Shown here in pieces: positions 13,042 through 53,380 of a stretch of DNA of 64,000 nt; position 1 is the first letter of the stretch, and each line of letters begins with the position of its first letter. The stretch covers positions 2,232,001 through 2,296,000 of the forward strand of contig NW_025964334.1 of assembly GCF_023055435.1 (NCBI RefSeq), in the 5' to 3' direction. The DNA is from Haliotis rufescens (Eukaryota). The notes under the pieces were generated by a model that had not been told where the DNA came from, ran no database searches, and saw nothing but the letters and a program-made list of their open reading frames with translations. Both the position numbers and the translations under genes were made by a program.

Positions 13042-13182
13042 TTAACAACTCTGACAATGTCGATCAAGGTATTTGATAGAGATGCAACTGACTCTGACGT
13101 TCTGTTTCATAAGGATGCCGTCGATACTCGGAACTCCTGTCTTGAACGAGTGCATAACCACAACCCTGGAATCCACTGTTAC
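13042..13182 (-). CDS. Copy A exon 5 (galectin C-terminal strands, stop)
   Basis: VTVDSRVVVMHSFKTGVPSIDGILMKQNVRVSCISIKYLDRHCQSC*. Confidence 0.82.
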   Translation of the reverse strand, partial: VTVDSRVVVMHSFKTGVPSIDGILMKQNVRVSCISIKYLDRHCQSC

Positions 13183-19100: not shown

Positions 19101-20104
19101 AAACATTTCTTGTGTTTAGTGCGCACGGTTTCCAAGGAACTACATTAATGGATAATTAATTGACCAATTCATATAGGTTCATATAGTTCTGATTCTCATA
19201 GGGGATATAACTTCACTGATCAGACTCTTATATGGGTTTGAACGCCACAGAGTAGGTTCGTAAAGGGATATAACGCCAGTAACTGGTTCTTATAGGGGAT
19301 ATACCTCGATTGACTAGATTATGTAGGGACGATCACGACACTGACGAGGTTATGACAGGGCTTATGACGTCTCTTATCAGGTTCGTAAAGCGATTTAACG
19401 TCACTGACCACATTCTTATAGGGATTATCACGTCATTGAACAGGTTATATAGGGGATCGTACACTGACTGCGTGGGACGTTGCTCGCTTGTCTGGTAGAT
19501 ATCCGATTATTTACGCCTTGCTGTGACATGGCTGCAATATTGCTGTCCTCGACCAAAACAACATTCATTCACTCACCTAAAGCTCATTTATTATCTGATA
19601 TACTCAGGCCCTTGGATGTAATGTATCAGTGTTTATAACGTGATGTGAATGTTTACCAGTTGGTTCCCACTAAACAATTTCTTTGAATCTGGTTTCTAAG
19701 ATAAAATATGCAGTACAATGTATGTTCATGCACTCGAAGGGGTAAGAGGGAAATAGTTCAACGCAGTTTGTTTTTTTACAAAGCAGACATTTAGCGTGAA
19801 GTTGGGACAGCAGGAATGGACAATGCACTACTGTTTTAGCATCAAACCTGCTTCTGATGTAACAAATGCAATGTTGACAGAAGGTCCGAATGCTTGCAAA
19901 CCTACCTTGCACGTCGCCGTTGCTGTAGGGGTTGTCGATGGAGATGGAGACGTCGGACACAAATGTGACACATGAGGCTTCTTGGCTGCACTGGATGCCT
20001 GTCCAATGCGTTCCTAACACAGTGATCCTATAAGGCTGAGGTTGTTCAGCGGCGCCCAGTGTCATACATATGAACGCTGAGATACAGTAGCCGACCGGGG
20101 ACAT
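13042..20104 (-). CDS. Five-exon gene, copy A: secreted Sushi/CCP + galectin-fold protein (~276 aa); exons 20104-19906, 18649-18450, 17294-17203, 14584-14386, 13182-13042
   Basis: All introns GT..AG with phases 1,0,2,0 and no stops. Protein: MSPVGYCISAFICMTLGA (signal) ... CSSPSSIPNAK..YTCNINYGFC..RTCLKSGDWS..AVC (CCP) ... KFPCKAHRGTHVTVKG..RFGVYL..VVTND..GKWG..FPFKVDQPFEMVF..VTVD..VRVSCISI (galectin fold). Confidence 0.85.
14386..14584 (-). CDS. Copy A exon 4 (galectin core)
   Basis: RFGVYLKLGRDVSHAYIGVSSPPQVVVTNDNVRGKWGQSHVKQNGFFPFKVDQPFEMVFTIQLTRIV matches the galectin RF-x-V..N..G-x-WG..FPF..PF pattern. Confidence 0.85.
15285..16240. repeat. Three adjacent degenerate intronic minisatellites; mirror ~31705-32700
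   Basis: Units like gtcatctcgtgacatt.., aggtaacagaaataac and tgttactgttgagtctata. Confidence 0.85.
17040..17200. repeat. Minisatellite (tgttactgtcgtgtctata-like) abutting the exon 3 donor; mirror ~30800-30960
   Basis: Directly visible tandem units of ~20 bp. Confidence 0.8.
17203..17294 (-). CDS. Copy A exon 3 (N-terminal strands of galectin fold)
   Basis: SSVSVTQKFPCKAHRGTHVTVKGVPTRKRN(R); phase 0 to phase 2; donor AG/GTAAGT. Confidence 0.82.
17341..17406. repeat. 24-bp tandem repeat x~2.7; mirror ~30597-30662
   Basis: gtcatacccgtc(t/a)tcaacacc(t/a)ag. Confidence 0.85.
18450..18649 (-). CDS. Copy A exon 2 (Sushi/CCP domain)
   Basis: C-x-x-P-x-x-I-P-N..Y-x-C..T-C-x-x-x-G-x-W-S..C pattern; acceptor ctccctag; donor CTG/GTAATA. 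Confidence 0.88.
18888..18996 (-). pseudogene. Truncated duplicate of the Sushi exon within intron 1 of copy A
   Basis: Same acceptor as copy B exon 2; homology stops after CNINYSF and the frame reaches TGA about 9 codons later. Confidence 0.8.
19165..19470. repeat. ~33-bp minisatellite; mirror ~28870-29175, same family at ~57770-58095
   Basis: tataggggatataacgtcactgaccaggttct-like units. Confidence 0.8.
19906..20104 (-). CDS. Copy A exon 1 (signal peptide + CSQEASC segment)
   Basis: ATG at 20104; hydrophobic N-terminus; phase-1 donor CAAG/GTAGGT. Confidence 0.8.
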
Positions 20105-25680: not shown

Positions 25681-28229
25681 CTTTCTGCTACATGGAAATA
25701 ATGCCATTGGAATCCCAGTTTGATGACACAAGATCTGTATACAGACCCTGTAAATATTTTGTATTGTGTATTCAGACAAGTAATAGGGCGGACCTTTCAC
25801 TGGAATCCAAGGTGTGTCTTTTCTCATCATTACCATTGGTTGCATTTAAATGACTGTGAAACTGTTTTTCATTAGATTTGAACAGTTTATTTTGTTTTGG
25901 GAAATTTTTCTTGTCCTCATGAACTCATGGAAATTGAGAGTAAGAAAACACACTCTCTTCATGGTTTGCTTGTTTGTTTGTTGTTTATTCAGCAATATTC
26001 CGGCTACATGACGGCGGTCTGTAAATAATCGAGCCTTGACCAGACAATCCAGTGATTGACATCAAGAGCATCGCTCTACGAAATGCGGATCGATGACATG
26101 CATCAACCAAGTCAGCGAGCCTGACCACCCGGTCCCATTAGTTGCCTCTTATGACAAGCATAGTCGCCTTATAGGGGAAGCATGGGTTGCCGAAGACCTA
26201 TTCTACCCCGGATCTTCACGGGTCGGTTCATTCGATGGAACCTGCACCTGTAAACTTCCTACCCTCATAGAGAGGGATGAAATACCTGATATTTAAGAAG
26301 ACATTGCACCCCCCTGCAGTAGCACTGAACTACATACACCTTGAAGATATATTACACGAAATACATCCATTGGATGAATCAGCAGAAATCATGCTTTTTA
26401 ATGGCAGTGACTTGATCGAAATTCATCATGCGCTTGAACAGCGTAAAGGACCACGCAGAACCCGTTGATGCACAGAATTTGTGACTTGGCTCGGTAATTA
26501 GGGGGAAAACATGTACCGGAGACCGTGAGAAAGACGTACCTTGAGCAAATTCGGCTTTATTTAGTTACAATAGAGAGACAGTGTTAGTTTATTCTATTAC
26601 AGCTCTTCTGAGTTCTGTAGACATACACTCTTCCAAAAAAGGAACGCACAGGTAGTAATTAGTTCATTGAACCTGACTGCACAAAATCCGGTATATATAA
26701 ATTTGATATATGTTTTATTGGAAAATGTTGGTGGCCTGATGACTTACTTAAGGTAATCGATATCTCCTACAATTATTACAACGTACATCGTTATATGAAC
26801 GTTACGGCAAGCTACATACCATACAATTTTCTCATGACATTTACCATACATAACAAATATTAAAGGAATAAAACCATGTGTTATATCATATAGACATATC
26901 CTGAAAGACATATATCATGTCGAGTTGTTCCTTGCAAGAAGAAACAGACAGAACAATAATTTCTTCTACTACAAAGTGGAAGGCAAGGGAGAAAATCATA
27001 AGCAGGCTGACTTACTTAAATAAAGCGACAAAATCCTTACCATATCCAATAAAAATAACTGCCAAAAGAAGAGTCGATTGTACGATTCTGACGATATCAT
27101 GAGCATGTGTTTATGAATCACTATCAAATAGTGATGCTACCAGGTGTTCTCGAAAAGATGAGCGTTTCCCTTTCCCACCAGTGGCACTCGTCACAAAACA
27201 CATACAAAGACAAATCAATTGTTCACCTGAAAAGACACGGGAACCTATGGTCAAAATAAGGAATTATAATCGATATCTCCTACAATTATCACAACGTTAT
27301 AGTTATATAACTTAGTTATATGTTCTTATTGACAAGTTACATGTCGTATATTTTTCACATGGTATTTACCATGTAATTTGATGACTTATATGATACGATG
27401 ACTGAGAAAACAATGCTATGTACAATTTGAACTGAATAAAAAATCATTAAAAAATCCAACGTTAACGTATGACTTCGGTAATGTCTCTTACAACTGACTC
27501 ACAGTTACATGTTGACTCAATAGATGATAAGGATAATTATGAAGATAGATTGATAAGATTTAAAATGAAATAAAGAGAATAAATATATTTGTTGTTATTT
27601 TGATCCATTTTGTTATGTGACTTTTTTGTACTTCACATGTAAACATTCTGTGTTTATCAATTTTTCAATATGAGTGTATTTCACCTCTAATGGTGGCAGA
27701 TAAGGATTAAACTTTCGGTTCAGAATGTAAAAAGAATATAAAATATTAATTAGGGCAAATATCGTTTGAAACAGTATCATCAGTTATATATTTAAATAAA
27801 AGTGACAAACCCTTTCCATATTCATAAGATATCTCTGCTAAAAGCAGATGACGACTATGACATAAGCATGTGTTCATGAATCACTATCAAACAGTGTGGT
27901 TTGCCAGGGTGAGTCTAGAATTTGAACCTACAATCAGTTGCACATATCACGGAGTCATGGATGACAACAAATTGCGGGCACTGGGTGAGTTGGAGCACTG
28001 TGTAAGTTTAGAATGGCCAATAAGTATTGATATAATACAATTAGACTTTATCTTTAAATTCTCCTATGATTAAGATAAGCTGACATTTATTGATCTTCTA
28101 TCAAATGCCATTCTGAATTTTATTACATTTATTTTAGAAATACTTGATTAATTATTTATATTGACATTGACCAACGACGAGTTGGCAAGGAACTGCCTCA
28201 GTTGATATAACATACAAAAAGCAGGCGAT

Positions 28230-28428
28230 ATGTCCCCGGTCGGCTACTGTATCTTAGCGTTCATATGTATGACACTGGGCGCCGCTGAACAACCCCAGCC
28301 TTATAGAATCACTGTGTTAGGAACGCATTGGACAGGCAACCAGTGCAGCCAAGAAGCCTCATGTGTCATATTTGTGTCCGACGTCTCCATCTCCATCGAC
28401 AACCCCTACAGCAACGGCGACGTGCAAG
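28230..28428 (+). CDS. Copy B exon 1 (signal peptide)
   Basis: MSPVGYCILAFICMTLGAAEQ...GDVQ; donor at 28429. Confidence 0.82.
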
Positions 28429-31400
28429 GTAGGTTTGCAAGCATTCGGACCTTCTGTCAACATTGCATTTGTTACATCAGAAGCAAGGTTTGATGCTAAA
28501 ACAGTAGTGCATTGTCCATTCCTGCTGTCCCAACTTCACGCTAAATGTCTGCTTTGTAAAAAAACAAACTGCGTTGAACCATTTCCCTCTTACCCCTTTC
28601 GAGTGCATGAACATACATTGTACTGCATATTTTATCTTAGAAACCAGATTCAAAGAAATTGTTTAGTGGGAACCAACTGGTAAACATTCACATCACGTTA
28701 AAAACACTCATACATTACATCCAAGGGCCTGAGTATATCCGATAATAAATGAGCTGTAGGTGAGTGAATGAATGTTGTTTTGGTCGAGGACAGCAATATT
28801 GCAGCCATGTCACAGCAAGGCGTAAATAATCGGATATCTACCAGACAAACGAGCAACGTCCCACGCAGCCAGTGTACGATCCCCTATATAACCTGTTCAA
28901 TGACGTGATAATCCCTATAAGAATGTGGTCAGTGACGCTATATCCCTTTACGAACCTGATAAGAGACGTCATAAGCCCTGTAATAACCTCGTCAGTGTCG
29001 TGATCGTCCCTACATAATCTAGTCAGTGAAGTTATATCCCCTATAAGAATCAGTTACTGGCGTTATATCCCTTTACGAACCTACTCTGTGACGTTCAAAC
29101 CCATATAAGAGCCTGATCAGTGAAGTTATATCCCCTATGAGAATCAGAACTATATGAACCTATATGAATTGGTCAATTAATTATCCATTAATGTAGTTCC
29201 GTGGAAACCGTGCGCACTAAACACAAGAAATGTTTACAATTCTCCTTTAATGCTCCCCAGGATTTGATTAGACAAAAACGTAGTTCTATGGAAACCATGG
29301 GTCCTACATAAATGTTGCAATACCCCCTTTTTTCTTAGTCCCCTCAGGGTGTAGCTCGCCAAGCTCCATCCCCAACGCTAAAGTGTCAGCTCCATCTAGA
29401 CAAGAAAGAGACAATGCTACCTACACCTGCAACATCAACTACGGCTTCTGTAGCAAAGTGGACAACACCAGGACCTGCCTCAAGTCAGGCGATTGGAGTA
29501 CCCTCGACCCTTCAGCTGTGTGTCATCAGATTTACTGGGACAAACTGGTAATACTCAAAGTAAATTACCACTGATTAAATGCCCCCCCCCCCCCCCCCCC
29601 CCCCCTTCCCTAGCCGCTTTGTAGAAGTTAAGTGGGTAGATGTAGAGGCTCATCACACCTTTGTACAATGGAATGCAGTAAACGAGGAGTAATGCAGGAG
29701 TCCTTTACGCTTCAGTTTGACCAATACGACTATAATTAGTTTACACGAAACCCTCAGTGCTTCATGCATCGATACTTAAGAAATGAATTGAATGTGTGAG
29801 TTCATTGCAGTATGAACGTCGAAGCTTGCGACAACGTTCATACAATGTTTGGCCCTCACTCAATAAGGATTCACACTGCAATAAACTCACACAAAGTGAA
29901 AATCTCTCCGTATTACTTTTTACATTGGTATTTTGTACCTCGAAGGATGTAGGTCTTGATCTATACACAATTTTATTTAGTATCAAGTGGGTTTTTATGC
30001 TCACAATGACAGTCAAACAACAACTGTATCGCGGAATAAAATAGTTCCTTAAAAAGAGAGGTGACGTGAGCGTATGTATGCTCAACTTCCTCTTCAGGAA
30101 CAACTGTTTGATCCCAACAAATGTATTCAAATAATATCATCATTGAATGAGAAAGGTGTGCAAGTCAGTCACAATGACAGCGCGTTATAGTACATTTACT
30201 TCAAATATGAGATGTGACGGAAGAGATTTCCGAAGTTGTTAATGAACCTGTGGCGGTTATATATGTTGGCTGATCACTGAAAGGTAATATTAAAGATATG
30301 TCAAAAAGATACTTTTGTAAATGCATAAATTGTCGTGGAGTCGATACAACGATAGTTTAGATGTGCATTTCTTCACTTTGTTCACTGGGATGGGTAGTAG
30401 CTAGGATACTTGTGGATGGTTACGCAGTCAAATTCTCTGACGTTTCTCAATGTATACTAAAACAATGAATATGAAAGTCAATTTCGCCGTTATGTGACTG
30501 TTCTCTCGTCCAGTGGAAAAGTTGTTTATCATGTAAACTTCACCTGCAAAAATGTTATGGGGATGAACACGCATGTACGAAGTGTTAAGGGCGGAAGTCG
30601 AGGACGGGTATGACCTTGGTGTTGATGACGGGTATGACCTAGGTGTTGAAGACGGGTATGACTTTACCATTGTTTTACTGAGCCACCATGAGCTTGTTTT
30701 TTTCAGTCATCTGTCCCTCTAGCTCAGAAGTTCCCTTGCACGGCACACCGCGGAACAAACATCACCGTGAAGGGTGTACCGACACGGAAAAGAAACAGGT
30801 AAGTAACAACATACAGACACGACAGTAACATGCAGACACGACAGTAGCATATAGACGCAATAACATATAAATACGACAGTAAGATACAGTCACGATAGTA
30901 ACATATATATTCAACAGTAGCAAACATTCACAACAGTAATATTGACTGGACAGTAACATAATGGCGTTCTGGGGTTAACTGAACCCTACTACAGCAACCT
31001 ACTTTATTGTCGTTCCGCCCTGTTGTGGACATTGGGAGACATGCCTCCACCACCTGCATGGTCAGCCAAGGGTCCGTTAAGGCACGGGGTAAAATCAACC
31101 CAGACTCCGAACTATCTCCATCAGCATTCATGTACCGGCCCTTGCTCTCAATTATCAACACAACTCATAGGTGATACTCACATACGTTTAATCGCTCCAG
31201 TCCAGTTCCAAATACAACTTTGAAATAAGACAGTCCAGAAAGACTGAAAAACGGGCTATTAGCGATCGGCTTCAGTCTCTGGTAAAGTCCGCTCTCCTCG
31301 GCTGGTGCTGAACGCATCTGTTTAAAGTGTCCGAGTTTAACCGTTCTTTGTCATTATGTAATTATATCTCAATTTGATTCGTTAAAAGTTTGATCTGACC

Positions 31401-34400
31401 ATGAACTCATGTGTGTCGAACTCGGAAAGAAACTAAAGCCTCCGCATACATTTGTGTATATCTCCAGTGGTTTTAGACTCACTCCAGATTCTTCCAATCT
31501 GCTGATTCATTAACTAATCGCCGAAAATGTGGAACCAATCCAATAATAAATATGAAATGTTCAGAAACAATCCGATGGTAAATGTGAAATGTCCTTTCTC
31601 TATTAATCCCTTTCTAAGTAGAGCTTCTCTGTTACAAACTTCATGTACAATGCAACTACATCATTGCAGCTATAAGCAGTTTAATTAGTTATAATTTTGT
31701 AACAAAAAGACTCAACCATAACATAAAGTCACGACAGAAACACATACTTGACAGTGCCATATAGACTCAACAGTAACATACAAACTTGACAGTGCCATAT
31801 AGACTCAACAGTAACATACAAACTGAACAGTAATTTATAGACTCAACAGTAACATACAGACTGTACAGTAATTTATAGACTCAACAGTAACAACCAGACT
31901 GAACAGTATTACATAGACTCAACACTAACATATACTCACGAGGGTAATATACATACTCGACAGTAATACATATTAAAGAAGCACTCACTCACTATTCTAA
32001 ATTGATGATTTATTTTTTCCGTATGTGTGTTGCAGTGTTCAGGGTGACGAGTTCAGGTAGTGCCTGTTATTTGTGTTACCTGTTATTTCTATCATCTGTT
32101 ATTATATTTCCTGTTGTTTCTGTTATTTGTGCTACTGATACTTGTTATTCCTGTTATCTGCAGTTCTGTTACGCTTAATTTGCGTTGCCCGTAGTTCTGT
32201 TACTTGTTATTTCTGTTACCTGTAAGCCTGTTATATGTTGCTCTGTTACCTATGCATGTGTTACCTGTATTTCTGTTACCTTTTATTACTTATATTTGAA
32301 CTTCTGTTACTTTTATGTGTAGTTCTGTTACGTTATTTCCTTTAGCATTATTTATGTTGCTGGTTATTTCTGTTACCTACTATTCCTTTTACCTGTTGTT
32401 TCTCTTTCTCTCTGTGCCCTTATTTCTGGTTCTCTTACCTGAATGTCAGCATCACCTGTTGTTGTTCAAGGAGTTGTCAATGATTTTCCCCTTCAAATCG
32501 TATGTGTCTTTTGTAGGTAATGTGAGATATTACAGCCATTGGATGAAATGACCTGGAAGATGACCTTGGTATTGAATGACATTGGCTGACCTTGGGAGAG
32601 GTTGTCACGACATGACCTTTGGGTTGAATGTGACGAGATGACCCTTTAGAGTTTATGTCACGAGATGACGTTTGGATGGAATGTCACAAGATGTCACTAA
32701 AAGTGAATATCTGTAACTTCTTTTGGGGGTAGATGCAGGAATCATTAACCGTCAGTTGGCACCCGACTTTGGCCGTTTTATTTAATGTAACAAGATTTCG
32801 TTCTTTAAGTTATTTTCTTCAATTACCGATTTTTGTATGTGTCATTTTCTTACTCTTTTAGGCTTACTGCACAATTATTCATGCCAACAAATGTTCATTT
32901 GAATATGTTTGCATGTCAGGCTTGTATAACAAACTTTGACTTGATGTAACCATCCATCTATCTATCTTAAGCTGAAAATATAAATTAGTTCAATGTCAAA
33001 CTTGACCAGTTTTACTAAATTTTGGCCAGACATTAAACTAGACGACATATCTACCTAATTTCAGGTTAAACAATAAATATATGTGTCATGTTTATTCATG
33101 AATATTACTAAATGAAACAAATGAAAGAACAAAGGAAGTTCTTATTGTCTGAACAACGTTAAGAAACTCAGCAACACTGATCTGATCATCAAAAAGTTGC
33201 TTTGGGTTCACAGCCGACCCAAAACTAAACTTACCCGGTGAGTGAGTGAGTGAGTGAGTGAGTGAGTATTGTTTCACGCCGCTTTAAGCAACATTCAAGC
33301 AATCTCACGGCGGGGGACACCAGAAATCGGCTCCACACATTATTCCCATGTGGGGAAAATCGACATGGACATTTTGAAATGTTGTGAAATGTCGTGTTAC
33401 AGGTTCGAAGTCTATCTAAGACAAGGCCGACACGTCTCCCATGCCTTCATCGGTGTCAGTAGTCCTCCGCAGATCGTGGTGACCAATGATAACGTCAGAG
33501 GCAAATGGGGCCCAGCGCATGTGAAACGGAAAGGATTCTTCCCTTTCAAAGTTGACCAGCCATTTGAGATGGTGTTCACTATTCAGTTGACCAGAATTGT
33601 GGTATGTATATTTTTATTGAGAGAGTGATTGACTTTTGTTTTACGGTGCAGATTTATATTCTAGCTAAAACAAGCCTGAATGTATGTAAAAAATTCATAA
33701 TTCAGTGTGGGTCAGGCGAACGAGGTGTTATGCAAGAGTGCTGGGCCCTTTACGCTTGAATTTCACCAATACGGATATATGTTTAGTTGAGACGAAACCC
33801 TCAGTGCTTCAAGCTGTAACGTCGTTAATATTCTCATGTGGGTCAGGGAAATCTGTGGTTGGTGAAGTGAAGGATTTGATTCGTACTGACCTTCAAGTTC
33901 CTAACAACATGCAAATCCTATCACACATAGTCGAAGGTAATATCCGCTGCCTTGTGGTTCGGTGATATGTCCCGTTTCACTTGACTTGAAACGTAAGTTC
34001 CTCCAACTCACAAGAGCACACGAAGATCCGGTACAGAGAAGGTCTTCAGCAACCGATGCTTGCCGTAAGAGGCGACTTACGGGATCGGGTTGTCAGGCTC
34101 GTTGACTTGGTTGATGCATTTCCAAATGCGTGGATTGATGCTCTTGATGTCAATAACTTGATTGTCTGGTCCAGACTCGATTATGTACAGACCGCCGTCA
34201 TATAGCTGGGATGTTGCTGAGAGCGGCGTTAAACAATAAAAAAACAAAATACAACAAAAAAACAACACAAGAGCACAACAGCTCAAGCTGCTATGAAGAC
34301 CTCTAATCTTACAGGCTCGAGTCATACAAGGTTTGTAGCGGACACTCCTGACTTTTTGTCCGATAAAACATTTGATTTTTTATAAATTTGTCGTGTTACA

Positions 34401-34939
34401 AAGCAATATCCCAGGCCTGATATAGTTTGACATGAAAATAGGTTCAAATAGTATAAGGTGCAGCGTTGATAAGCAACGACCAGCGCCGACGGTAAATGAG
34501 AGCCACCGAATCACAGTTTCAGTCAAACTTTAGACAAGCACTGGGTCATGTTCAGCTCAGGAATACTCACACAGAAAACCTGTTGATCGTAACACACTAA
34601 CCCCTTCATATCTGTGATTGTGTTTCTTGGTTTGCCAGCACCATACCCGTGCTGATGGGGTCTCAATAGGTGAAAACGTCCAAGACATGCATCACTTTAG
34701 GCTTTCCTCCCACATTCAGCTAATTTAACCGACATATGCATTCAACATGACGTTAAACTCACTCACTCACTCACTCACTCACCTTTTGTATCATTTAGGT
34801 AACAGTGGATTCCGGAGTTGTGGCTATGCACTCGTTCAAGACAGGAGTTCCGAGTATCGACGGCATCCGTATTAAACAGGACGTCAGAGTCAGTTGCATC
34901 TCTATCGAATACCTTGATCGACATTGTCAGAGTTGTTAA
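28230..34939 (+). CDS. Five-exon gene, copy B: secreted Sushi/CCP + galectin-fold protein (~279 aa); exons 28230-28428, 29339(or 29348)-29547, 30707-30798, 33403-33601, 34799-34939
   Basis: Exon lengths 199+209+92+199+141 = 840 nt, open frame ending TAA at 34937-34939. Donors GTAGGT, GTAATA, GTAAGT, GTATGT. Acceptors tttttcttag, tttttttcag, gttacag, catttag. ATTAAA lies ~20 nt after the stop. Confidence 0.88.
29339..29547 (+). CDS. Copy B exon 2 (Sushi/CCP)
   Basis: (VPS)GCSSPSSIPNAKVSAPSRQERDNATYTCNINYGFCSKVDNTRTCLKSGDWSTLDPSAVCHQIYWDKL; two in-frame acceptors 9 nt apart. Confidence 0.88.
30707..30798 (+). CDS. Copy B exon 3
   Basis: SSVPLAQKFPCTAHRGTNITVKGVPTRKRN(R); flanked by tttttttcag and gtaagt. 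Confidence 0.85.
33403..33601 (+). CDS. Copy B exon 4 (galectin core)
   Basis: RFEVYLRQGRHVSHAFIGVSSPPQIVVTNDNVRGKWGPAHVKRKGFFPFKVDQPFEMVFTIQLTRIV. Confidence 0.86.
34799..34939 (+). CDS. Copy B exon 5
   Basis: VTVDSGVVAMHSFKTGVPSIDGIRIKQDVRVSCISIEYLDRHCQSC*. Confidence 0.84.
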   Translation, partial: VTVDSGVVAMHSFKTGVPSIDGIRIKQDVRVSCISIEYLDRHCQSC

Positions 34940-37397
34940 AACGAGGAGATACTTATATTAAACTTGATCTGGCCTCAGTAGTATTTCATTTATATGCCGA
35001 TAAAGTGTACGTTGTGTACTACTAAAAGAGGCAATTCAAGTTTTTTTCGTCGATCACATCAGCTCAGTCAGTCTACGGTTAGAATGACGCCACATAAGAC
35101 AATTTATGATGATAGGAACGATGGATGACGTTATCTTCAATTGTTCAATTTTGATCATGTCTATTTCACCATCACTCATTCCTGCAACAACCTTGTAGAA
35201 AAGTAATCTATGGCTGGGTTAATTTGTGTAAAACTAACTTGTTACAATGAAAACTGTGGTAAGAAATGAATTTGCAACTATATGACTCCTACCATATATG
35301 AAATAATGTAAGCAATTTTATTGATTTTCCAAGGTAAGATGTCTAAGATACTCATCAGCAGTTTGTATCTAATGCTAAAAATAACAAAAGGTTTAAATCA
35401 AATTATATTTTAAAAAATACAACCATTTGGAAGTATTTTTTTAGTGCTGAGTAGCGCCAGTACGGTTAATGTTAGAGACATAATATCGTGGACTTAATAT
35501 ATTTTCATTTAAAAATCAAACACATGGTAAAAACAACTGTAAGTTATACATCCCTTTATCCCTGAGTGTATGTAGATTCATAATAAACCAACATGTATGC
35601 CCTCAACCCTCTGGTTTAAAATTTAACATGCAAGTATATTTACAAGTTGTATTGGCGTTTGGGTAAATTGTTTGTAAACGTATCGCAGCATCATGCGCTT
35701 GTAGGTTTCAAACACAATTTCCATTCTTCTTCAGCACTTCTATCTTGTGATCTCAAAAGCTGTACCCACGCTTCGATCATTCAAAGAGTTATTGTTTTAT
35801 GTCATCTCTGATTCCGATCCTTCTTTGAATTATCACGTTCACGTTTTTACTTCTCTGCGGGCATCTACACCGACCCAGAACCAATAATGTTCTGGCTTAC
35901 CCCATTGTTCTGGCCAGAAAATGCCCCCTCTACTTTGGTAATGTGGGGGTTGTAGAACACCTCTGATTCTCTGGACCATGGTGCTGAAGGGTATTCCAAC
36001 AACATAACAATTCCCTACATCGATCTGGCAGGCACATTTATGTTGATACTCCATTGGGTGTCACTTTTGTTCACTGTTTGCGCTCAGAGTACTTCGGATT
36101 TGGCTTGGCAGCTCAGGCCCTGTCTCCATTTCAAATTCCTACGAGATGTTATCGATGTTTTACTTTGACGCCATGTCATCAAGTGTTGCCTGATTGAATG
36201 GAATGTGACTCTTTAGTATCTCAGAGTCGAGGGGAATATTTAAATGGAAACCAAATACATCCGCTAAGGCTATGTTTGTTAACCTAGTATTTATGCAGTT
36301 TTTTCGCATTCTGGTTATTGCTGGTGTCAAAATAGATTTTCACATTCGTGGCACACATGAGAGCCGTCTCATTACCACTGATCATGATTGTGTTTTCTTT
36401 AGAATTGCACAACCTACGTTCTAGACAACAAACTAATTAGTCAAACTAACTTGTAAAGGCAAGGCGAGCCATCCCTTGAACTATTCCATCATTACTAAGA
36501 TTTGGAAACCGAACCGGCAATGAGTGATTTTGATTAAGGCACATTTTCTTATCTCTCATATAAATATTGACATTGATTTATAAAATATTAAAACTCCAGA
36601 TGCCGATACTGATGAGATGAGCTTTATAGATGATAATCTTCTCCAACCAACAATGGAATGTGGAGGGAGCCTTAATGACGAAATGTTACAATCAACTTAA
36701 TAGATTATTTGGACAAATCCGCCATCACTATGTTGAGTTGTGCATCCACAATAACATCAAATATAACATACATTTTAGAAGATGAAAAGCCAGTTCATTT
36801 GGAAGCCACATCTGATAACAGAGAAAGACTTTGTTCGCGGGGTTGGGGGATTCTGCTGCACCCTCTACACCGGGAAATAATAATAATGTAATAGATTGGA
36901 TACAAAAGTCATTAGGTCAAGCTCTGGGAAACCCTGCAAAGAAGGCCGTGCACTTACCTTAGATGAGTGATCACATTTGAGACTGGGAGCCTACTATTGC
37001 CCAGACGTAACGTATGGTTGAATCATTGTGTTTTCAACAGCGGGTTGAGTAAACCTTATTGAATTATCTAGAATGAATGTTGTCCAAACATTTTCGGTTT
37101 CTGTCGGTTGTGTAATGAACTGCGAATACAACATCTCCTTTGAAATTCATTCTCCACTGATTGCTAGATAGAACCAAGCCCTGTTGCAGTACGTCCCTTT
37201 TAAGTGAATCATTGCTTACTTCTATGACAGTCTTATATCCTGACACTGGGATGCCTAATCCAATTGGTTTGGGGCGAAACTCCAAACTCTGCTCACATCT
37301 TTTCATAAGTTCTGCGATTACATGGATCAATGTATGAACTCCACACTTGATCTGTTGTGCACCGGTTTCGGCACAATTTCCTCGGCTCCGGTTGTAT

Positions 37398-38500
37398 ATT
37401 ATTATTATTAATTTTATTAACTTGGTATTTATATAGCACTAGTTTCCAGACTGACTGCTCAAATGCGCTCTTGAAGCTCGCACAGTTGGTATGGCCGTAT
37501 ATATTTTGCTGAACAAGTGTGTCTTCAGATGTTTTTTGAAACTGTTAAGTTCACTGAGCATTCTGAGTTCTTTGTGCAGGGTGTTCCAAAGAAGAGGACC
37601 AGCCCTTGCAAAGCAGCGATCCCCGTAGGAGATTGTTCTTGATGGTGGCACTTCAAGCAACGATTGATCACAAGATCGTAGGGTTCTTGTTGACTGGTAT
37701 TGTATGATGAGATCCTCCAGGTAGCTTGGAGCAAGACCATGCTGTGCCTTGAACACAAGAACGAGAACCTTGAACCGTATTCTCTGTTCTACTTTAAGCC
37801 AGTGTAGACCTTTGAGAATCGGTGTGATGTGCTCACAGCGTTTGGCTCTTGTGATCAGTCTGGCAGCAGAGTTTTGTACCCGCTGAAGCTTTTGGAACTG
37901 GTGTTTCGGTAATCCTACCAGAAGGGCATTGCAGTAGTCAAGGTGCGATAGCACGCACGCTTGTACAATAGTAGTGACTGTCTTGGTGTTAAGATAGCGT
38001 CGCACTTGACTGATGTTCCTGATGTTGAGAAATGCTTTTTTGCAGACTTTGTTGATGTGTGCCTCGTAGGTCAGGTTTGAATCAAAGATAACCCCAAGGT
38101 TTCTTGTTTGGTAGCTTGGCTCAATAACAATTCCGTCGATGTTGAACTCTGGTATTGTCAATCTGTGTTTCGATGCCTTCGAGGTGATGATGACAAGTTC
38201 AGTTTTGTCACTGTTTAATTTGAGAAAATTGTTTCTCATCCATATTTTGATATCGGCTACACATGACATGACAGCTGCAAATGCAAGTACACACGAGACC
38301 TCGTTTGTTAGTTTGAATGACAAGTATATCTGTGTGTCATCAGCAAACAAATGGAATGTAATGCCGTGTGAGTGGACCACTTCACCCAGGGAAGAGGTGT
38401 AGATTGTGAATAGCAAAGGTCCAAACACTGAACCTTTGGGAACACCGTATTTTAGCTCGACCTTTTTAGATGTTGTGCCTTTCAGTTGAACAGATTGGTA
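37398..38500 (-). mobile_element. Mirror L2-like LINE, 5' part deleted
   Basis: ORF 37439..38509 is near-identical to 9552..10541. Confidence 0.92.
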
Positions 38501-39959
38501 TTGATTCAATCATCCAGGAACTTCTGATACCACAGTAGTGGATATAGCGAATATTGTTGCATTGATATCGAGGGGTGAAAACTACGCCAAGCTTATACTT
38601 TGATTGAAAATTAAAACTGAAAGCCATATTAGACATATATTTTAATATTTTTATAGAATTAAAATGTTTGTTACATAACCGGGAACGACAAAAAGTGTGT
38701 GCGTAAATACAACTGCCTCGATCTGTTGATAACTTGAGGAGACACCTCGTAGTCTTTGCAATGTTTGTGTGATCAATGCAGCTATTCTGTGTTTTGACAA
38801 CATTTCACAGAATAAAATATATATCTAAAATCACTTTGGCGTTTCTTTTTTGCAGTGTATATTTTTTCTCCGCTATTTTGCGTTTTAGACCCAATGGAAT
38901 CTGATTCGGCGGATAATCGTGATTGATTATGCTATGTCGTTGACGTTTTCATTTTTCTGACTTTGACGTTGTCGTTGACTCAACCATTTTTAGAAAAATC
39001 TCCAAACAGTTGCCTCAACTGCTAGTGTCACAATTTGGACGAGGGGAACGTCGACCGTCTTTTCCAGGGTCAGATCTTGAATCACAGAGACACAGGCTCA
39101 CAAGACATCATTGGTCTGAATCAGGTTGTCCTCTTGGGCAGTGAGGTTTGACGAATGTCATTGCCATGATGAATATTGGTTCAACGTCAGAGCCCGACGT
39201 CATCGAGTGGTATGTGCCTTCAACGTTCGTTTTCGATCCCAGCTTGTCATTGTACCTGGAAACCTCACTCGCCAACGTTACGTCAACGCAATTCTTCATC
39301 CATTTCTCATTTAGCTTCTCTGGCAACATGGTCACAACAAACTCTAGGTCCAGCATGATAATCTAGAAACAGCTAGTTTCACACACACTTTATTATGCAG
39401 AGCAGTGACTTGTGCTCCGCCTTCCAAATCCCCGGACATAAACCCCATGGAACATAGGAATAAAGCGAACTAACCCTTTCAATATCCAACAGAATATCTC
39501 TACATCAAGCAGAGTCGATTTTACAATTCCGACTATATTATGTTCATGTCTTTATGACCAGGTGATCGCGAAAAGGTGAGTGTATCCTGCCCCACCGGTA
39601 GCACCAATCACAAACACACGCAAAGGCGAAGAAAACAGGCTAATGCTGAACCCAAGCCTTGAAACTCTACTTGGCAAGGGCGAGAGTTTGAAATCATGGT
39701 CGTGTTTCTATTTTGCATGATATAGGCTGCGGAAGATGTTTAGCAGTGAATGCTAAAATACATGAATGATTCTCTTGAGTAAACCTTGGAATTCTGATGT
39801 TGCGCTTTTAATACTTATAAATGTCACAATTGCTTTTCAACATTCGTATCATATGGAGCAATAACAAATAAGTAATTGGTGATAATAACGAAACAGAAGA
39901 AACGCGAAATAGAGAATATTTTGTGGACATTCCGAGGAAAGAATAATTTCAAGCAACAT

Positions 39960-42105
39960 GTTATATACAAATGTTTGATCAACATATGTGCATGTTTAAT
40001 GCTCATATAACCAATACGCGATGTGGAAGTTGTTTAGGTAAAGGGGTTTATACTTTTATAAGTAGTACAGGAGCAAGTGTAATTGATTATGTTGGTTGGT
40101 TGGTTTGTTGTTTTACGCCGCACCCAGCAATATTCAAGCTATATGACGGCGGTCTGTAAATAATCGAGTCTGGACCAGACAATCCAGTGATTAATATCAT
40201 GAGCATCGATCCACGCGAGCCTGACCACCCGATCCCGTTAGTCGCCTTTTACGACAAGCATACATGCAGTCACATTTTACGGCAAGAAAGGGTTGCTGAA
40301 GACCTATTCTACCCAGGAATCGTCACGGGTCAATTGATTATGTGATTAGCACAAGTGATATTTTTTAACTTTGTAAAAGATTTGATGTAATTTCACGACA
40401 TTAGTCACAGCATCGTCACCACAAAATGTCCACAAGAGCGCTTCACTCAGGATCAAAACCAACCATAAACAAATTTATTTTAAATCAAAATTGTTGACTG
40501 GAAGGAATTTTTCTTAATAATCGTTTATCCGATACCTCTTCGTGAATGATTGAAACAGCTTTCGATCTTGTACATACGGACATTGATGATAGCATAAGAA
40601 TGTTCCTGATGCACTTAAATAGACTGGGGAAAAGATGAAGCGGGAAATTAAACCAGGTAAATAAGGTAGGCGATGGTTTGACTGGGAATGTTAGTCATTT
40701 TAAAGACGTATTTAGTGGTGCTGAATCAAGGCAAGATTTTCACTTGACTCAAATAGAAGATGAGTGCACTCTATCCAAATATATGCTGGATCAACCAATA
40801 TCATCTGCTATTCATGATTAGAAAAACAATAAAAGTTCAGCAAACGATGAATTGATAACAGATTTCTCATAATCTTCTTGTGTAATCACTTCTATACACC
40901 AAAAAAGGACCACTAAATGATGTAAATAACTACAGGCATACCACTCTCTAGCACATTCGTCATTTTTCTAGTTCAAGCATAAGTAAAAAATGGTATTTTG
41001 AACAGAAGCTCTTGAGAAGATTGGCGAAGAACAACTCCATTATAGATAACATTATCTTACAGGCTATTTCATGAAGAAAATAAAGAAAGCTTATCCTATA
41101 AAATCAGATCAACCATGGTTTGACTCAGAATGTGATTTCAATCGATCAGAAACGCTGAGGCTACTGAAACGTTTTAGAAGATCAAAGAACAGTGAATCAC
41201 TACATTTATTTGTTACTCAACGCAATAAATATAATGATCTAATAAGGAACAAAAAGAGACTATATGATGCATCTGTCAGAGACATGTTACTAGCTAATAT
41301 AAATAACTCAAAAAAGTTTTGGACTGTGCTAAAGAAATATACAACCAAGTCTTCAAAAAGGACAATGTAAATATATCAGAATGGTTTTCGTATGTCAAGA
41401 ACTTATTTGAAGAATGTGACGATAATTTGCCAGAACAGACTGATAAATCTGAAACTGACTATAATGCTGATGATACGGCCGCCTGTTTACTGGATTCTCC
41501 GATCAACCAAGAAGAGATACAAGAAGCAATATATAAACTAAGAAACTCCAAATCTCCAGGAAAAGATAACCTTATCTCAGAATTTGTCAAATCCTCCTCT
41601 GATATATTGTTGCCATACATGGAATTGTTGTTTAATGTCATTTTTGAATCATCTTATTATCCTAATACTTATAAAAGTATTTCCCTTTTAAGCACTTTAA
41701 GTAAACTTTTTTACATCAGTTCCTAATGCAAGATTAGTATTTTTGGGCAAATTCGTACCGCAAAGTTAGTGAGTCACAAGCGGGATTTCGAAAAGGTTAT
41801 AGCACTAATGGTAATATTTTCATTTTACAAACTATTATTCAACACAATCTTTCAAAAAAGCGTGGTAAGTTTTATGCGCTATTTGTGGACTTCAAGAAAG
41901 CTTTCGACTTTGTTAACAGATCTAAAGTATGGTTTATATTAAAATACAGGGGAGTTTCACCCAAGATGTTAAATGCACTTGAATCTATCAATAGTTGTGT
42001 GAAATCAAATAAAATATTATCTGAAACTTTTAATTATCCTTCAGGCCTTCGGCAAGGCTGCGTGTTGAGTCCCTTCATATTTTCTATTTTTATCTTATTT
42101 TTACG
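39960..42105 (+). mobile_element. Decayed RTE-X-like ORF2 (longer mirror copy)
   Basis: KSPGKDNLISEF, SQAGFRKGYST, FVDFKKAFD, GLRQGCVLSP. Confidence 0.8.
40093..40331 (-). mobile_element. SINE family 1 insertion unique to the right arm, 12-bp TSD
   Basis: aattgattatgt at 40081-40092 and 40332-40343; empty site at ~7230-7241 in the left arm. Confidence 0.93.
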
Positions 42106-43544
42106 TCCATTGGTTTCTACATGATGTTTTGGTGTATATATTTGGTGAGAATACACGATCCGTGGAAATGTTATTGTCATTGAAAGGTTTGTGTGATTTG
42201 ACATTAAAGGTCTTCCAGTGAGAATATGTATGAAGTTCATGATGGTTTGGATCTCTTTGTCTCAGCTCCATAACCGTGATGCTACGAAAGAGCAGCATTA
42301 AATTAATGAGAGTAGGTTATATCACAGAGGATACATTTTCAACGTACCTTAAAGTTTAAAAACATGTTTTTTAAATATTTGTTAAATGTGGGGAGTTTAC
42401 AAGCAATAATTGTAATTTATGGTGTCATTTAAATATAAAAAAGTAAGATGGTAAATAATAAGATTGAATTTTTTTAAAGGCATTTATCAGAAAGTGACGG
42501 ATGACAAAGTAGACACAATGTATGGATAATGACGTCTTTATTTTACTGATAAAGCGACTTTTCGGTATAGATCCTTATTCCGTTGCTTGACAGTAAAAAA
42601 GAAGTTGTTATCTATAAATTGTGTCTACTTTGTCAATAATATTGAAATCGCATTTAAATAACAAGATACATACGTAATCCTAAAGCTTATGTTCCACATG
42701 CCCATATGAGCCAGGAGAAAAACTGATTAAATATAGAAGAAGAAGCTTACGTGCATGTAGAGACATCATCTGAATATCACATTATATGTAAATGTTACGA
42801 CACTCTACCTATCTACAGGAACTATTCAAAAATTGGCCAAGGGTCGTGGAGACCAAGGAAATAGATGTCTTCCTTTAGGAACACTTTATGTGGTTATTAT
42901 TGCCTCATTTTATTGAAAAGGATCCCCCTAAAAATCACTAATCGTTGAGTAACTTACATTAATCCAGCAGAGAAGGAGATGTGCAAATAAATATATATCC
43001 ACAAATACGCTTGAACCCATTGACATAGTCACTTTAACGTATGTAATTCTAACAATTTGTGATATCAAAAACTACTTTTGATATTTAAAATAACACTAAT
43101 TCCATTTGTAATATCAAAAAATACATTAGTTGATATAAAAATGCATTTTTTTATATGCACAAAATTTACGATATTAGTAAATATTTCATGATATAACAAA
43201 ATTAAATTTGTGATATAAATTCATTCTTTGGTATCAATAAATGAATCATTGATGTCATAATATAAGGAATAACTAGTAAAACGGCGCGTACAGAAGAAGT
43301 ACATAAGAGGCGTTTAAGATTCGAAATGTTTGGGCAGTTAGGTCTTTACTATCGATGTTATTCTTTGTTTTCTAAAAGCCTCACAACGAAATAAATTGTG
43401 AAATTCGTGTGCAATGCCTGGTGAGTTACATAATTTATGTGAGTGATCTTCTCCAGGGGGTACTTTTCAAAACTAGGTATATGTTTAAAATATTTGTAGT
43501 AAAGTCGTCCTCTCAACAACAATAGTAGGTAGCAGTACTACAGA

Positions 43545-43670
43545 ACCAGAAGTGGTTCTGCGCATGCGCGAAGAGGGCATTGTGGGTAATGCGTGCGCAT
43601 CCACGATGACGTCACTTTCGGTTCCGGGATGGCCTGCGCATCCAAGAGGATGTCACATCCGGTGCCGGGG
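43545..43670. promoter_or_regulatory. CpG-rich cluster of housekeeping-type motifs (NRF1-like, ZNF143-like, CRE, ETS-like)
   Basis: tgcgcatgcgc, ggcattgtgggtaatg, tgacgtca and ttccgg within ~120 bp; function not shown. Confidence 0.4.
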
Positions 43671-43680
43671 AGGACAAAAA

Positions 43681-44859
43681 AAGCTCTCGTAAATGAAAAA
43701 AAAAAGAAAAAGAAAAATGGAACAGAAGTGCTCGTAAAATCCTCCACTTTCATTTTTAAAAAAGCGAAGAAAGTGGCGGCGGCGGCGGAGGGTGGGAGGA
43801 AGGAGACGGCGGCGGCGGCGCCGGGGGAGGAGGGAGGGAGATAGGAGGCTGCTGCGGCGGCGGCAGGAAGGAGGGAGGAGGGAGGAGGGAGGAGGAGGTT
43901 TTTGTTGTTGTTGTGGTGGTGGAGAGTGTAGTCAAAGCAAGGATGAAGGCTTTCTTTTGGGGGAGATGGGTGGTCCTGAAAAGGGCCGTTTGATCGTGAG
44001 AGACTAACTCCTCAACCACATAGGTCCTTACTGCAAAGGCACCGTCACCGTCACCCCATCATCTACAGTTTGCAAGAAGGCTAGCCTCGTTTTAGGTGTG
44101 GCCGACGCAAATGAACCAGATCGCTGAAGAGAAGGCCCCATGCGGGCTTCGTGTACACGCAGAGTGCCGATGGTATGTAATGTTTCCAAGGCGTGCAGCT
44201 GAGAAGATGGGCGTCCACAACGATCTTTGGGTGGAACACCACAAGTGGTCCCCTTACTGCGACTTCCTCAAGCTGACAGGGCTAGTGAGACACAAGAAGA
44301 AGCTACAGCTACACTATCTCTGCGAGGAGAATGTGAATCAGAGCAACACGAATGAGGAAGCTTTCGCTGCTTTCCTTGGATGAAGTTTCCGTTCCCGTTT
44401 CCGTTTCCGTTCTCGTGACGGTCCTTATTTTCACACTCAACATTTCATAGTCACTAATGTACAAGGCATTACATGTCATCATCAGATCATGCAGTTCTAA
44501 TGGATCATCAATGACTTCGTACACTTCACCCCTCACTTTCCTCAGTGTCTTGACATCAATAAGATTGGACATTATGTTGTTGCTTGGACAGCAGCAAAAA
44601 AGTTTTCTTCTTCTTGTTGAAACGGTCCTTTTCAGGGCCACCCATCTCTTCCGAAAGAATGCTTTCATCCTTGCTTTGACTACCCTCTCCATCACCACAA
44701 AAAAACACCATCTCCTCCTCCCTCCTCCTCCTCCTCCGCCGCCGCCTCCTCCCTCCCTCCCGCCGCTTCTTTCGCTTTTTTAAAAATGAAAGTGGAGGAT
44801 TTTACGTGCGCTTCTGTGCCTTTTTTCAGTCTTTTTTGTTTACATTTACGAGCGCTTCT
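43681..44859. repeat. Imperfect inverted repeats (43681-43993 / 44618-44859) enclosing two convergent ORF remnants
   Basis: Shared cgtaaaatcctccactttcatttttaaaaaagcgaa, GGA/GGC-rich tract and gtagtcaaagcaaggatgaa..gagatgggtgg.cctgaaaagg. Confidence 0.85.
44078..44270 (+). pseudogene. Decayed intronless BIR (IAP) domain
   Basis: Across frameshifts and stops: RLASF*VWP..AGFVYTQSADGM*CFQ.GVQLRRW..NDLWVEHHKWSPYCDF. Confidence 0.8.
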
Positions 44860-53277: not shown

Positions 53278-53380
53278 ATGTCCCCCGTCGGGATATTGTA
53301 TTATAGCAAAGAAGCCTCATGTGTCACATTTGTGTCCGACGTCTCCATCTCTTCACCAACCACCACAGCACCGACGACTT
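53278..53380 (+). pseudogene. Mirror exon-1 relic with further internal deletion
   Basis: atgtcccccgtcgggatattgtattatagca joined directly to aagaagcctcatgtgtcac. Confidence 0.7.

What the first reader, a model, noticed from the sequence alone, without database searches (positions are those of the whole stretch)
28230..34939. Hidden multi-copy gene for a secreted Sushi/CCP + atypical galectin chimera
Seen: five short exons buried in repeats splice with consistent phases (1,0,2,0) into an open ~279-aa protein of signal peptide, Cys-pair segment, one CCP module and one complete galectin-fold domain. The same model holds independently in the mirror copy. Established: canonical galectins have no signal peptide and use H-x-N-x-R, N, W, E-x-R to bind beta-galactosides. 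Here only N (VVTN) and W (GKWG) are recognisable, while the HxNxR and ExR positions are replaced. Gastropod GREPs join galectin to IgSF domains, not to CCP. Inference: an expanded family of secreted recognition proteins coupling a complement-type module to a repurposed galectin fold. It could act in immunity, mucus or gamete interaction. I cannot tell from the sequence whether it has been described.
Basis: partly seen in the sequence, partly recalled or inferred. Interest (0 to 1): 0.85.

Follow-up and report, generated by a model that had tools for sequence, protein, structure and literature searches.

The report
Abalone Sushi-plus-galectin-like secreted gene family
The red abalone genome carries at least seven copies of a compact five-exon gene that should encode a secreted protein with one complement-type Sushi module and one fast-changing galectin-like sugar-binding domain, an unusual but not unprecedented lectin design whose expression and function are still untested.

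Summary
The five-exon model is real. Exons 28230-28428, 29348-29547, 30707-30798, 33403-33601 and 34799-34939 have AG/GT borders and phases 1,0,2,0.

Domain support is uneven:
- Exon 2 is a Sushi module (Pfam 35 bits).
- Exon 4 is the galectin core. It reaches the Pfam cut-off in 6 of 7 copies, and its profile hits galectins, plus two weaker non-galectin chains, in the PDB.
- Exons 3 and 5 fit only by length and order.

The mirror copy is not independent, because it lies in a ≥20-kb inverted duplication that is 95-98% identical, introns included. Better evidence comes from three further cluster copies, a divergent copy 660 kb away and one on another scaffold. All keep the exon order, phases and open frames.

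Among the five cluster copies, exons change as fast as introns but carry no frameshifting indel (10.6 expected). The Sushi exon is conserved. The galectin exons vary 2.7-fold more in amino acids.

Of the canonical sugar-binding residues, His, Asn and Trp remain and Asn, Arg, Glu and Arg are replaced.

No RNA evidence was obtained. The spliced protein was never searched or folded.

Verdict: a likely real, possibly unannotated lectin family and a new variant of a known kind.

The parts
28150..28162 (+). TATA-like motif about 70-80 nt upstream of the start codon of copy A
   Evidence: A 13-nt AT-rich block is invariant in six copies, including the divergent copy H, whose flanks otherwise differ.
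28230..28428 (+). Exon 1 of copy A: ATG, about 19-20-aa hydrophobic leader, then about 47 aa holding two conserved Cys. Ends in phase 1.
   Evidence: ORF and GT donor. Conserved with only in-frame indels in copies B-E and H. No Pfam hit.
29348..29547 (+). Exon 2 of copy A: one Sushi/CCP module. Intron phase 1 before, 0 after.
   Evidence: PF00084 at 35 bits. Five Cys and the Trp are invariant in seven copies. The acceptor at 29347/29348 is shared by all copies.
30707..30798 (+). Exon 3 of copy A: 30 codons plus 2 nt, inferred N-terminal strands of the galectin-like domain. Ends in phase 2.
   Evidence: Plausible candidate among 66 open AG..GT candidates of the right phases, picked by eye and the one conserved in paralogs. 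Present with the same length and splice sites in B-E and H, and extended in F. No database match of its own.
33403..33601 (+). Exon 4 of copy A: galectin core (strands carrying the ligand site, then the FPFKV block). Ends in phase 0.
   Evidence: PF00337 at 22.2 bits on positions 54-92. Six of seven copies match. The PDB profile search returns mostly galectins, down to E 2e-5. hhalign to a tandem-repeat galectin gives E 4.5e-6.
34799..34939 (+). Exon 5 of copy A: C-terminal strands, a CxxC tail and the TAA stop.
   Evidence: PF00337 positions 97-132, weak (11.6 bits). Conserved in B-E and H, and found in F with a family HMM.
34957..34962 (+). ATTAAA polyadenylation-type signal 18 nt after the stop
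   Evidence: Lies at +18 or +19 in all six copies examined.
13042..20104 (-). Copy B, the mirror gene, with five intact exons (20104-19906, 18649-18450, 17294-17203, 14584-14386, 13182-13042)
   Evidence: Its exons are 90-97.5% identical to copy A and its introns 94-97%.
63727..63931 (+). Exon 1 of copy C. The rest of the gene lies beyond the window end (locus L007).
27576..56659 (.). Right arm of an inverted segmental duplication. The left arm is 1-20758 and the spacer is 20759-27575.
   Evidence: megablast of the window against itself, 90-98% identity.
3183..3379 (-). Lone, frameshifted relic of exon 1. Its mirror partner is at 53305-53378 (+).
   Evidence: tblastn gives two hits in different frames and no other family exon nearby.

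Best explanation
This is a lineage-expanded family of compact five-exon genes in red abalone (Haliotis rufescens), with at least seven loci. Each copy should encode a secreted protein of about 276 aa.

The predicted product has four parts:
- a cleavable leader;
- a short segment with two Cys;
- one conserved Sushi/CCP module;
- one C-terminal galectin-derived domain.

Shown here:
- the gene anatomy;
- the Sushi identity of exon 2 and the galectin identity of exon 4;
- conservation of the reading frame, splice sites, a TATA-like motif and a poly(A) signal across paralogs;
- selection against frameshifts;
- a conserved Sushi exon beside fast amino-acid turnover in the galectin exons. That turnover is concentrated in the part of exon 4 that carries the ligand-binding strands of ordinary galectins.

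Inferred: the protein is exported through the ER. The Sushi module is a constant handle, for a partner or for oligomerisation. The galectin-like concave face is a variable recognition surface whose specificity has moved away from plain beta-galactosides. Cluster copies keep His, Asn and Trp but have lost Asn, Arg, Glu and Arg. The old paralog F keeps Trp-Gly-x-Glu-x-Arg. Copy H has lost nearly all of these residues.

The most likely role is extracellular recognition of foreign or self glycoconjugates or proteins. I rank immune recognition first, then mucus or shell matrix, then gamete interaction.
For: Anatomy and domains:
- Exon anatomy and phases.
- Pfam Sushi at 35 and 37 bits. Gal-bind_lectin at 22.2 bits in copy A and 26.9 bits in copy F, matched in 6 of 7 copies.
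- PDB hits are mostly galectins for the exon-4 profile.
- phmmer over 1.84 billion proteins returns canonical animal galectins at E 4e-6 to 8e-4.
- hhalign maps His, Asn and Trp onto a galectin.

Family:
- All five exons lie in order in copies A-E and H, and exons 2-5 in copy F.

Constraint:
- 0 frameshifting indels in 831 exon columns, against 59 in 4604 intron columns. The expectation is 10.6 and P is about 2e-5.
- Between copy A and copy H the exons are gap-free conserved islands (exon 2 is 92.5% identical in nucleotides). The introns are mostly unalignable.
- dN/dS against copy F is 0.4-0.5.
- The TATA-like block and ATTAAA are conserved.
- An unconstrained exon-1 relic is frameshifted.

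Domain contrast:
- 9 of 66 Sushi codons are amino-acid variable, against 52 of 142 galectin codons, at equal synonymous variation (p 6e-4).
- In exon 4, residues 1-43 have 19 variable codons and residues 44-66 have 3 (p 0.014).

Other species: genomic contigs of two related abalone species carry the exons at about 94% identity, without gaps in exons 2 and 4.
Against: - There is no transcript or junction evidence. The runs that held the stretch were genomic.
- Within the cluster, exons are no better conserved than introns (14.0% against 14.4% variable columns).
- dN/dS of the galectin exons is about 1 (0.75-2.15), and about 0.7-1.0 between A and H. On substitutions alone neutral decay cannot be excluded.
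- The deficit of stop codons is not significant (1 seen, 3.5 expected, P 0.14).
- Copy D has a premature TAA nine codons early, and copy E has a GC donor after exon 3.
- Exons 3 and 5 have no significant galectin match.
- Exon 4 of copy A clears the Pfam cut-off by only 0.1 bit.
- The leader has no basic n-region and was judged by eye only.
- No family member turned up in the protein library.
Confidence: 0.7

Rival explanations
1. The copies are silent or dying duplicates. An ancestral Sushi-galectin gene was amplified by recent segmental duplication and gene conversion, and most or all cluster copies now drift neutrally. The open frames would then reflect youth and conversion rather than function.
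For: - Exon and intron substitution levels are equal.
- dN/dS is about 1.
- Copy D has a premature stop and copy E a GC donor.
- Identity along the gene is mosaic (A against C: exon 4 and intron 4 at 96%, exon 5 at 89%), which suggests conversion.
- Exon relics lie nearby.
- No RNA evidence and no protein in the library.
Against: - No frameshifting indel in any of five copies where 10.6 are expected.
- Copy H keeps every exon, phase and splice site although its introns no longer align.
- The two domains evolve at significantly different amino-acid rates with equal synonymous variation. Drift does not predict this.
- Promoter and poly(A) motifs are conserved.
Confidence: 0.17
2. The exons are real but belong to a larger or different transcript, for example one of the big secreted mosaic proteins (chitin-binding, Sushi, galectin and other domains) seen in abalone shell matrix. 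They would then not form a compact 276-aa protein.
For: Abalone shell proteomes list mosaics that hold both Sushi and galectin domains (PMC6003135). The 5' exon of copy F was not found within 6.8 kb.
Against: - Six copies each start with a conserved ATG and leader behind a conserved TATA-like block.
- Each ends with a conserved stop followed 18-19 nt later by ATTAAA.
- Copies A and B lie head to head, so no shared upstream exons are possible.
- The phases close without extra exons.
Confidence: 0.06
3. Function-level rival: the domain is still an ordinary beta-galactoside-binding galectin that is merely routed through the ER. The replaced residues would be compensated, for example by Arg or Lys two positions downstream in a longer loop.
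For: - His, Asn and Trp are kept.
- hhalign can place a downstream Arg opposite the canonical Arg by opening a 2-residue gap.
- Copy F keeps Trp-Gly-x-Glu-x-Arg.
- Some true galectins lack one canonical residue. Galectin-8N has Ile at the Arg position in the alignment.
Against: Four of seven canonical positions are replaced in all five cluster copies, and they vary between copies. Copy H has lost Trp and Asn as well.
Confidence: 0.15

Closest known systems
Canonical animal galectins, including the tandem-repeat (2- or 4-CRD) galectins typical of molluscs
   Same: - The exon-4 core matches PF00337 and PDB galectins.
- The Asn, Trp-Gly and Phe-Pro-Phe landmarks and the His are present.
- The domain length is about 133 residues.
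- The CRD is split over three exons, with the ligand-site strands in the middle one. That vertebrate galectin genes are arranged this way is from my own knowledge, not tested here.
   Different: - A predicted ER signal peptide is present. Galectins, lophotrochozoan ones included, lack one (PMC8878817).
- There is a single CRD fused behind a Sushi module.
- Four of seven ligand residues are replaced.
- The family is Cys-rich and carries a CxxC tail.
GREPs (galectin-related proteins of the VIgL group) of heterobranch snails
   Same: Secreted chimeras that place a galectin-type domain at the C-terminus behind another extracellular module. They form a multi-gene family thought to act in recognition.
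   Different: GREPs carry IgSF domains and are reported only from Heterobranchia (PMC9334734, PMC8878817). Here the partner module is a CCP and the animal is a vetigastropod. No IgSF match was found.
Abalone shell-matrix mosaic proteins with Sushi and galectin domains (Haliotis laevigata proteome, PMC6003135)
   Same: Same genus. Both have a signal peptide and combine Sushi and galectin domains in one secreted protein.
   Different: Those are large mosaics with multiple chitin-binding, FA58C, fucolectin or further Sushi domains. This family has only one Sushi and one galectin-like domain. The sequence relationship was not tested.
Selectins and lecticans (C-type lectin domain next to CCP modules)
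   Same: The design logic is shared: an extracellular lectin head coupled to complement-control-protein modules.
   Different: Their lectin head is a C-type lectin fold, not a galectin fold, and they are vertebrate families. This comparison is from my own knowledge.
Nematogalectin of Hydra, and sugar-binding-deficient galectin relatives (GRIFIN, galectin-related protein)
   Same: Nematogalectin is a galectin domain fused to a non-lectin module and exported (cited in PMC12549020). GRIFIN and GRP show that galectin folds survive loss of canonical residues (own knowledge).
   Different: Nematogalectin's partner is a GlyXY collagen-like region. GRIFIN and GRP are leaderless single-copy cytosolic proteins.

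Membership tests
Galectin domain (Pfam PF00337 Gal-bind_lectin) | Sequence match to the family HMM at or above the gathering score | tested here: met
   Exon 4 alone scores 22.2 bits in copy A (cut-off 22.1) and 26.9 bits in copy F. Six of seven copies match and copy H does not. This is supported by a PDB profile search that returns mostly galectins.
Galectin domain (Pfam PF00337 Gal-bind_lectin) | Complete beta-sandwich of about 130 residues | tested here: inconclusive
   Exons 3-5 are colinear with the HMM in length and order, with exon 5 on positions 97-132 at E 0.19. Exons 3 and 5 give nothing significant on their own. The spliced domain was not folded.
Galectins in the strict sense (beta-galactoside-binding lectins) | Canonical ligand residues His-x-Asn-x-Arg, Asn, Trp-x-x-Glu-x-Arg | tested here: not met
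   Cluster copies keep His, the second Asn and Trp. The first Asn, the Arg, the Glu and the last Arg are replaced and vary among copies. Copy F keeps His, Asn, Trp, Glu and Arg. Copy H keeps almost none.
Galectins in the strict sense (beta-galactoside-binding lectins) | Leaderless, synthesised in the cytosol | tested here: not met
   Exon 1 opens with Met and a hydrophobic stretch of about 14 residues. It ends in small residues (Gly-Ala-Ala) before a polar segment, and this is conserved in six copies. It was judged by eye, with no predictor.
Galectins in the strict sense (beta-galactoside-binding lectins) | Binds beta-galactosides | not testable with these tools
   Needs recombinant protein and a glycan array.
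Sushi/CCP/SCR module (Pfam PF00084) | HMM match above the gathering score | tested here: met
   35 bits in copy A and 37.4 bits in copy F (cut-off 20.7), covering positions 1-55 of 56.
Sushi/CCP/SCR module (Pfam PF00084) | Four framework Cys and the conserved Trp | tested here: met
   Cys 1, 27, 43 and 58 and Trp 49 are invariant in seven copies. There is also a fifth invariant Cys at 34.
GREP / VIgL | N-terminal IgSF domain(s) ahead of the lectin domain | tested here: not met
   No Ig-type Pfam hit in any exon. The module ahead of the lectin domain is Sushi. IgSF domains of VIgLs are hard to detect (PMC9334734), but here the space is filled by the CCP.
Selectin / lectican type (CTLD + CCP) | C-type lectin domain | tested here: not met
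   No Lectin_C hit. The lectin-like part matches the galectin family.

The most novel reading that the evidence does not exclude
A previously unannotated vetigastropod family of 'constant handle, variable head' recognition proteins. A conserved CCP module would carry a galectin-derived domain whose former sugar-binding face is under diversifying selection among tandem paralogs. That would be an abalone counterpart of the heterobranch FREP/GREP idea, built from different parts, and would add a secreted CCP-fused class to the galectin superfamily.
Probability: 0.25. Interest if true: 0.65.

Novelty: new variant of a known kind. Interest (0 to 1): 0.45.

Why it matters
Galectins are defined as leaderless beta-galactoside binders, and mollusc galectins are described as tandem-repeat proteins. 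A signal-peptide-bearing, single-domain, CCP-fused and rapidly diversifying galectin derivative would widen what the fold is used for.

It would also give abalone, a farmed and endangered group hit by infectious disease, a new candidate family of extracellular recognition proteins.

The contrast between the conserved Sushi exon and the variable galectin exons points to where a ligand surface should lie, and this can be tested. If the genes prove silent, the locus is still a clean example of a palindromic segmental duplication with gene conversion.

Tried and rejected
1. RNA support. The look-up of sequencing runs listed no run on record as RNA that holds the stretch. The four best small-share runs (X1, X3, X4, X6) proved to be low-depth genomic contigs of related abalones that cross exon-intron borders. 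They show no splice joints and say nothing about expression.

2. Finding the family in protein databases. phmmer of exon 4 against 1.84 billion representatives gave only distant galectins and some bacterial repeat proteins. The search for homologous proteins was not used, because its length window (0.55-1.75 times a 66-aa exon) cannot reach a 276-aa protein.

3. The spliced (joined) protein was never built for any search or fold. All database work was done exon by exon, by reference.

4. Complex prediction with exons 3, 4 and 5 as three separate chains returned 'no answer' (score 0.17, mark 0.34). This is no evidence either way.

5. hhalign and PDB profile searches of exons 3 and 5 alone found nothing meaningful.

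6. ESM Atlas on the mature part of exon 1 gave only chance-level hits.

7. Exon 1 of copy F was not found by HMM or by a leader-plus-donor scan.

8. Stop-codon deficit is not significant. Pairwise dN/dS does not separate neutrality from mixed selection.

9. One script held typed peptide strings and ran. From then on only coordinates were used.
Full report
**Where we are**

The window is G000:C556:2232001-2296000. G000 has 1,334,454,214 bases in 615 pieces. That equals the published red abalone primary assembly xgHalRufe1.0.p (1,334,471,355 bp, 616 scaffolds) minus its 17,141-bp mitochondrial genome (PMC9709998). The genome is therefore Haliotis rufescens, which agrees with an earlier scan note (s1-811071).

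**The observation**

Reading the sequence and testing borders by script gives a five-exon model on the + strand:

| Exon | Coordinates | Notes |
|---|---|---|
| e1 | 28230-28428 | ATG; ends in phase 1 |
| e2 | 29348-29547 | ends in phase 0 |
| e3 | 30707-30798 | ends in phase 2 |
| e4 | 33403-33601 | ends in phase 0 |
| e5 | 34799-34939 | ends with TAA |

- Every acceptor is AG and every donor is GT.
- e3 was picked by eye as the plausible candidate among 66 open AG..GT candidates of the required phases in the 3.9-kb gap. It is the candidate conserved in all paralogs.
- The exons sum to 831 nt, which is 276 codons plus the stop.
Copy A has both acceptors, but only 29347/29348 is shared by the other copies.

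**Domains, searched exon by exon**

Each exon was submitted by reference.

- e2 is a Sushi/CCP module (PF00084, 35 bits, cut-off 20.7, positions 1-55 of 56).
- e4 matches Gal-bind_lectin (PF00337) at 22.2 bits (cut-off 22.1) on HMM positions 54-92.
- e5 continues on positions 97-132 at a weak 11.6 bits.
- e1 and e3 match nothing.
- A profile of e4 from seven copies hits mostly galectins in the PDB: galectin-8, -4, -3, -9 and -7, plus an adenovirus fibre head (E 1.9e-4) and one unrelated chain (Hax3, E 0.008). E-values go down to 2e-5.
- phmmer of e4 against 1.84 billion representatives returns canonical multi-CRD animal galectins at E 4e-6 to 8e-4.
- hhalign to one of these galectins gives E 4.5e-6.
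- e3 and e5 alone give nothing significant by hhalign or PDB profile search.

'Complete galectin fold' therefore rests on the e4 core plus colinearity. The count of 30+1+66+36 residues compares with a 132-position HMM.

**Ligand residues**

In the alignments:

| Copy | Kept | Lost or replaced |
|---|---|---|
| Cluster copies A-E | His, strand-5 Asn, Trp-Gly | first Asn, its Arg, the Glu and the last Arg; these positions also vary between copies |
| F | His, Asn and Trp-Gly-x-Glu-x-Arg | first Asn and its Arg |
| H | almost none | Trp and Asn lost as well |

**The mirror copy is not independent**

Window 1-20758 is an inverted copy of 27576-56659, with a 6.8-kb spacer between them. Copy B (exons 20104-19906, 18649-18450, 17294-17203, 14584-14386, 13182-13042) is intact. 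Its introns are 94-97% identical to those of copy A and its exons 90-97.5%.

**Independent copies**

Searching the whole genome with e4, e2 and e5 and fetching the loci showed the following.

- Three more cluster copies lie downstream: C (its e1 is at window 63727-63931), D and E.
- Copy H lies 660 kb away on the same scaffold.
- Copy F lies on scaffold C594.
- All five exons lie in order in A-E and H, and e2-e5 in F, with the same phases and splice sites.
- Copy D has a TAA nine codons before the normal stop. Copy E has a GC donor after e3. The other copies are intact.
- A TATA-like 13-mer about 70-80 nt upstream of the ATG is invariant in six copies, including H. So is an ATTAAA 18-19 nt after the stop.

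**Is it under selection?**

Within the cluster, substitutions do not separate exons from introns. Variable columns are 14.0% in exons and 14.4% in introns. Pairwise dN/dS of the galectin exons is 0.75-2.15.

Indels do separate them. There are 59 small frameshifting gap events in 4604 ungapped intron columns and none in 831 exon columns, where 10.6 are expected (P about 2e-5). The only two exon indels, both in e1, are in frame.

The deficit of stop codons is not significant (1 seen, 3.5 expected).

Over a longer span:
- Between copy A and copy H the exons are gap-free islands (e2 is 92.5% identical in nucleotides). The introns are mostly unalignable.
- Against copy F, dN/dS is 0.4-0.5.
- A lone e1 relic at 3183-3379 is frameshifted, which shows what unconstrained copies look like.

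**Two domains, two regimes**

Among the five cluster copies:

| Region | Amino-acid-variable codons | Codons with synonymous variation |
|---|---|---|
| Sushi exon (e2) | 9 of 66 | 5 of 66 |
| Galectin exons (e3-e5) | 52 of 142 | 12 of 142 |

- The difference in amino-acid variation is significant (Fisher p 6e-4).
- Inside e4, variation sits in residues 1-43, the strands that carry the ligand site in galectins (19 of 43). The Phe-Pro-Phe-Lys-Val core half has 3 of 23 (p 0.014).
- Between A and H, e2 is 83% identical in amino acids and e4 only 31-34%.

For the A/B pair alone the excess is marginal, and the 22:7 ratio of replacement to silent changes equals the neutral expectation.

**Expression**

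This was not resolved. No listed holder is recorded as RNA. The four runs I laid are low-depth genomic contigs of two related species that cross exon-intron borders. They do show that the exons exist there at about 94% identity, without gaps in e2 and e4.

**Known relatives of the design**

- Lophotrochozoan galectins are described as leaderless tandem-repeat proteins (PMC8878817).
- GREPs (IgSF plus galectin) are reported only from Heterobranchia (PMC8878817, PMC9334734).
- Secreted proteins that hold both Sushi and galectin domains are already listed in the Haliotis laevigata shell-matrix proteome, as large mosaics with chitin-binding and other domains (PMC6003135).
- Full-text searches found no paper that describes a compact CCP-galectin protein.

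**Verdict**

This is very probably a real, lineage-expanded gene family. It should encode a secreted protein with one Sushi module and one galectin-derived domain that has an altered, fast-evolving ligand face. It is a new variant within the galectin superfamily rather than a new kind of system.

Function, expression, the full fold and annotation status remain open. I place immune recognition first among the possible roles, but that ranking is inference only.

Noticed in passing
window 1-20758 and 27576-56659: A palindromic inverted segmental duplication with arms of at least 20 kb, 90-98% identical, around a 6.8-kb spacer (20759-27575). The right arm carries extra insertions.
   Followed up: partly
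window 3183-3379 (-) and 53305-53378 (+): Mirror-paired lone relics of exon 1. The left one is frameshifted, and no other family exon lies within 10 kb.
   Followed up: partly
window 18887-18985 (-): The first half of the Sushi exon (33 codons) is duplicated inside intron 1 of copy B. This accounts for most of the 337-nt size difference from copy A's intron 1.
   Followed up: no
window 33100-33400 and 33900-34099; 33239-33267; 34757-34783: Very high-copy repeats (summed contig depth 1e4-1e5 in four abalone runs) lie directly upstream of exon 4 and inside intron 4. Tetranucleotide runs, (GAGT)n and (CACT)n, lie about 135 nt upstream of exon 4 and just upstream of exon 5.
   Followed up: no
proteins P0001, P0003, P0004 (hits): The best phmmer hits of exon 4 by score are giant bacterial proteins (two carry the CHU_C type-IX-secretion sorting domain, the third a CHU_C-associated Ig-like domain), with 7-9 repeated matches to residues 25-61. 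They may be galectin-like beta-sandwich repeats or a composition artefact.
   Followed up: no
loci L007-L009 against the window (copies A, C, D, E): Identity between paralogs is mosaic along the gene. For A against C, exon 4 and intron 4 are 96% identical but exon 1 and exon 5 are 89%. This suggests gene conversion or unequal exchange within the cluster.
   Followed up: partly
window 46588-51393 (+), 37439-38509 (-), 9552-10541 (+): Long ORFs typical of retroelements. The last two are mirror partners in the inverted duplication. Earlier notes on this window mention a LINE ORF1 and an IAP/BIR element.
   Followed up: no
window 29585-29606: A run of about 23 C in intron 2 of copy A. Contigs of related species replace 29557-29652 with different letters.
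   Followed up: no
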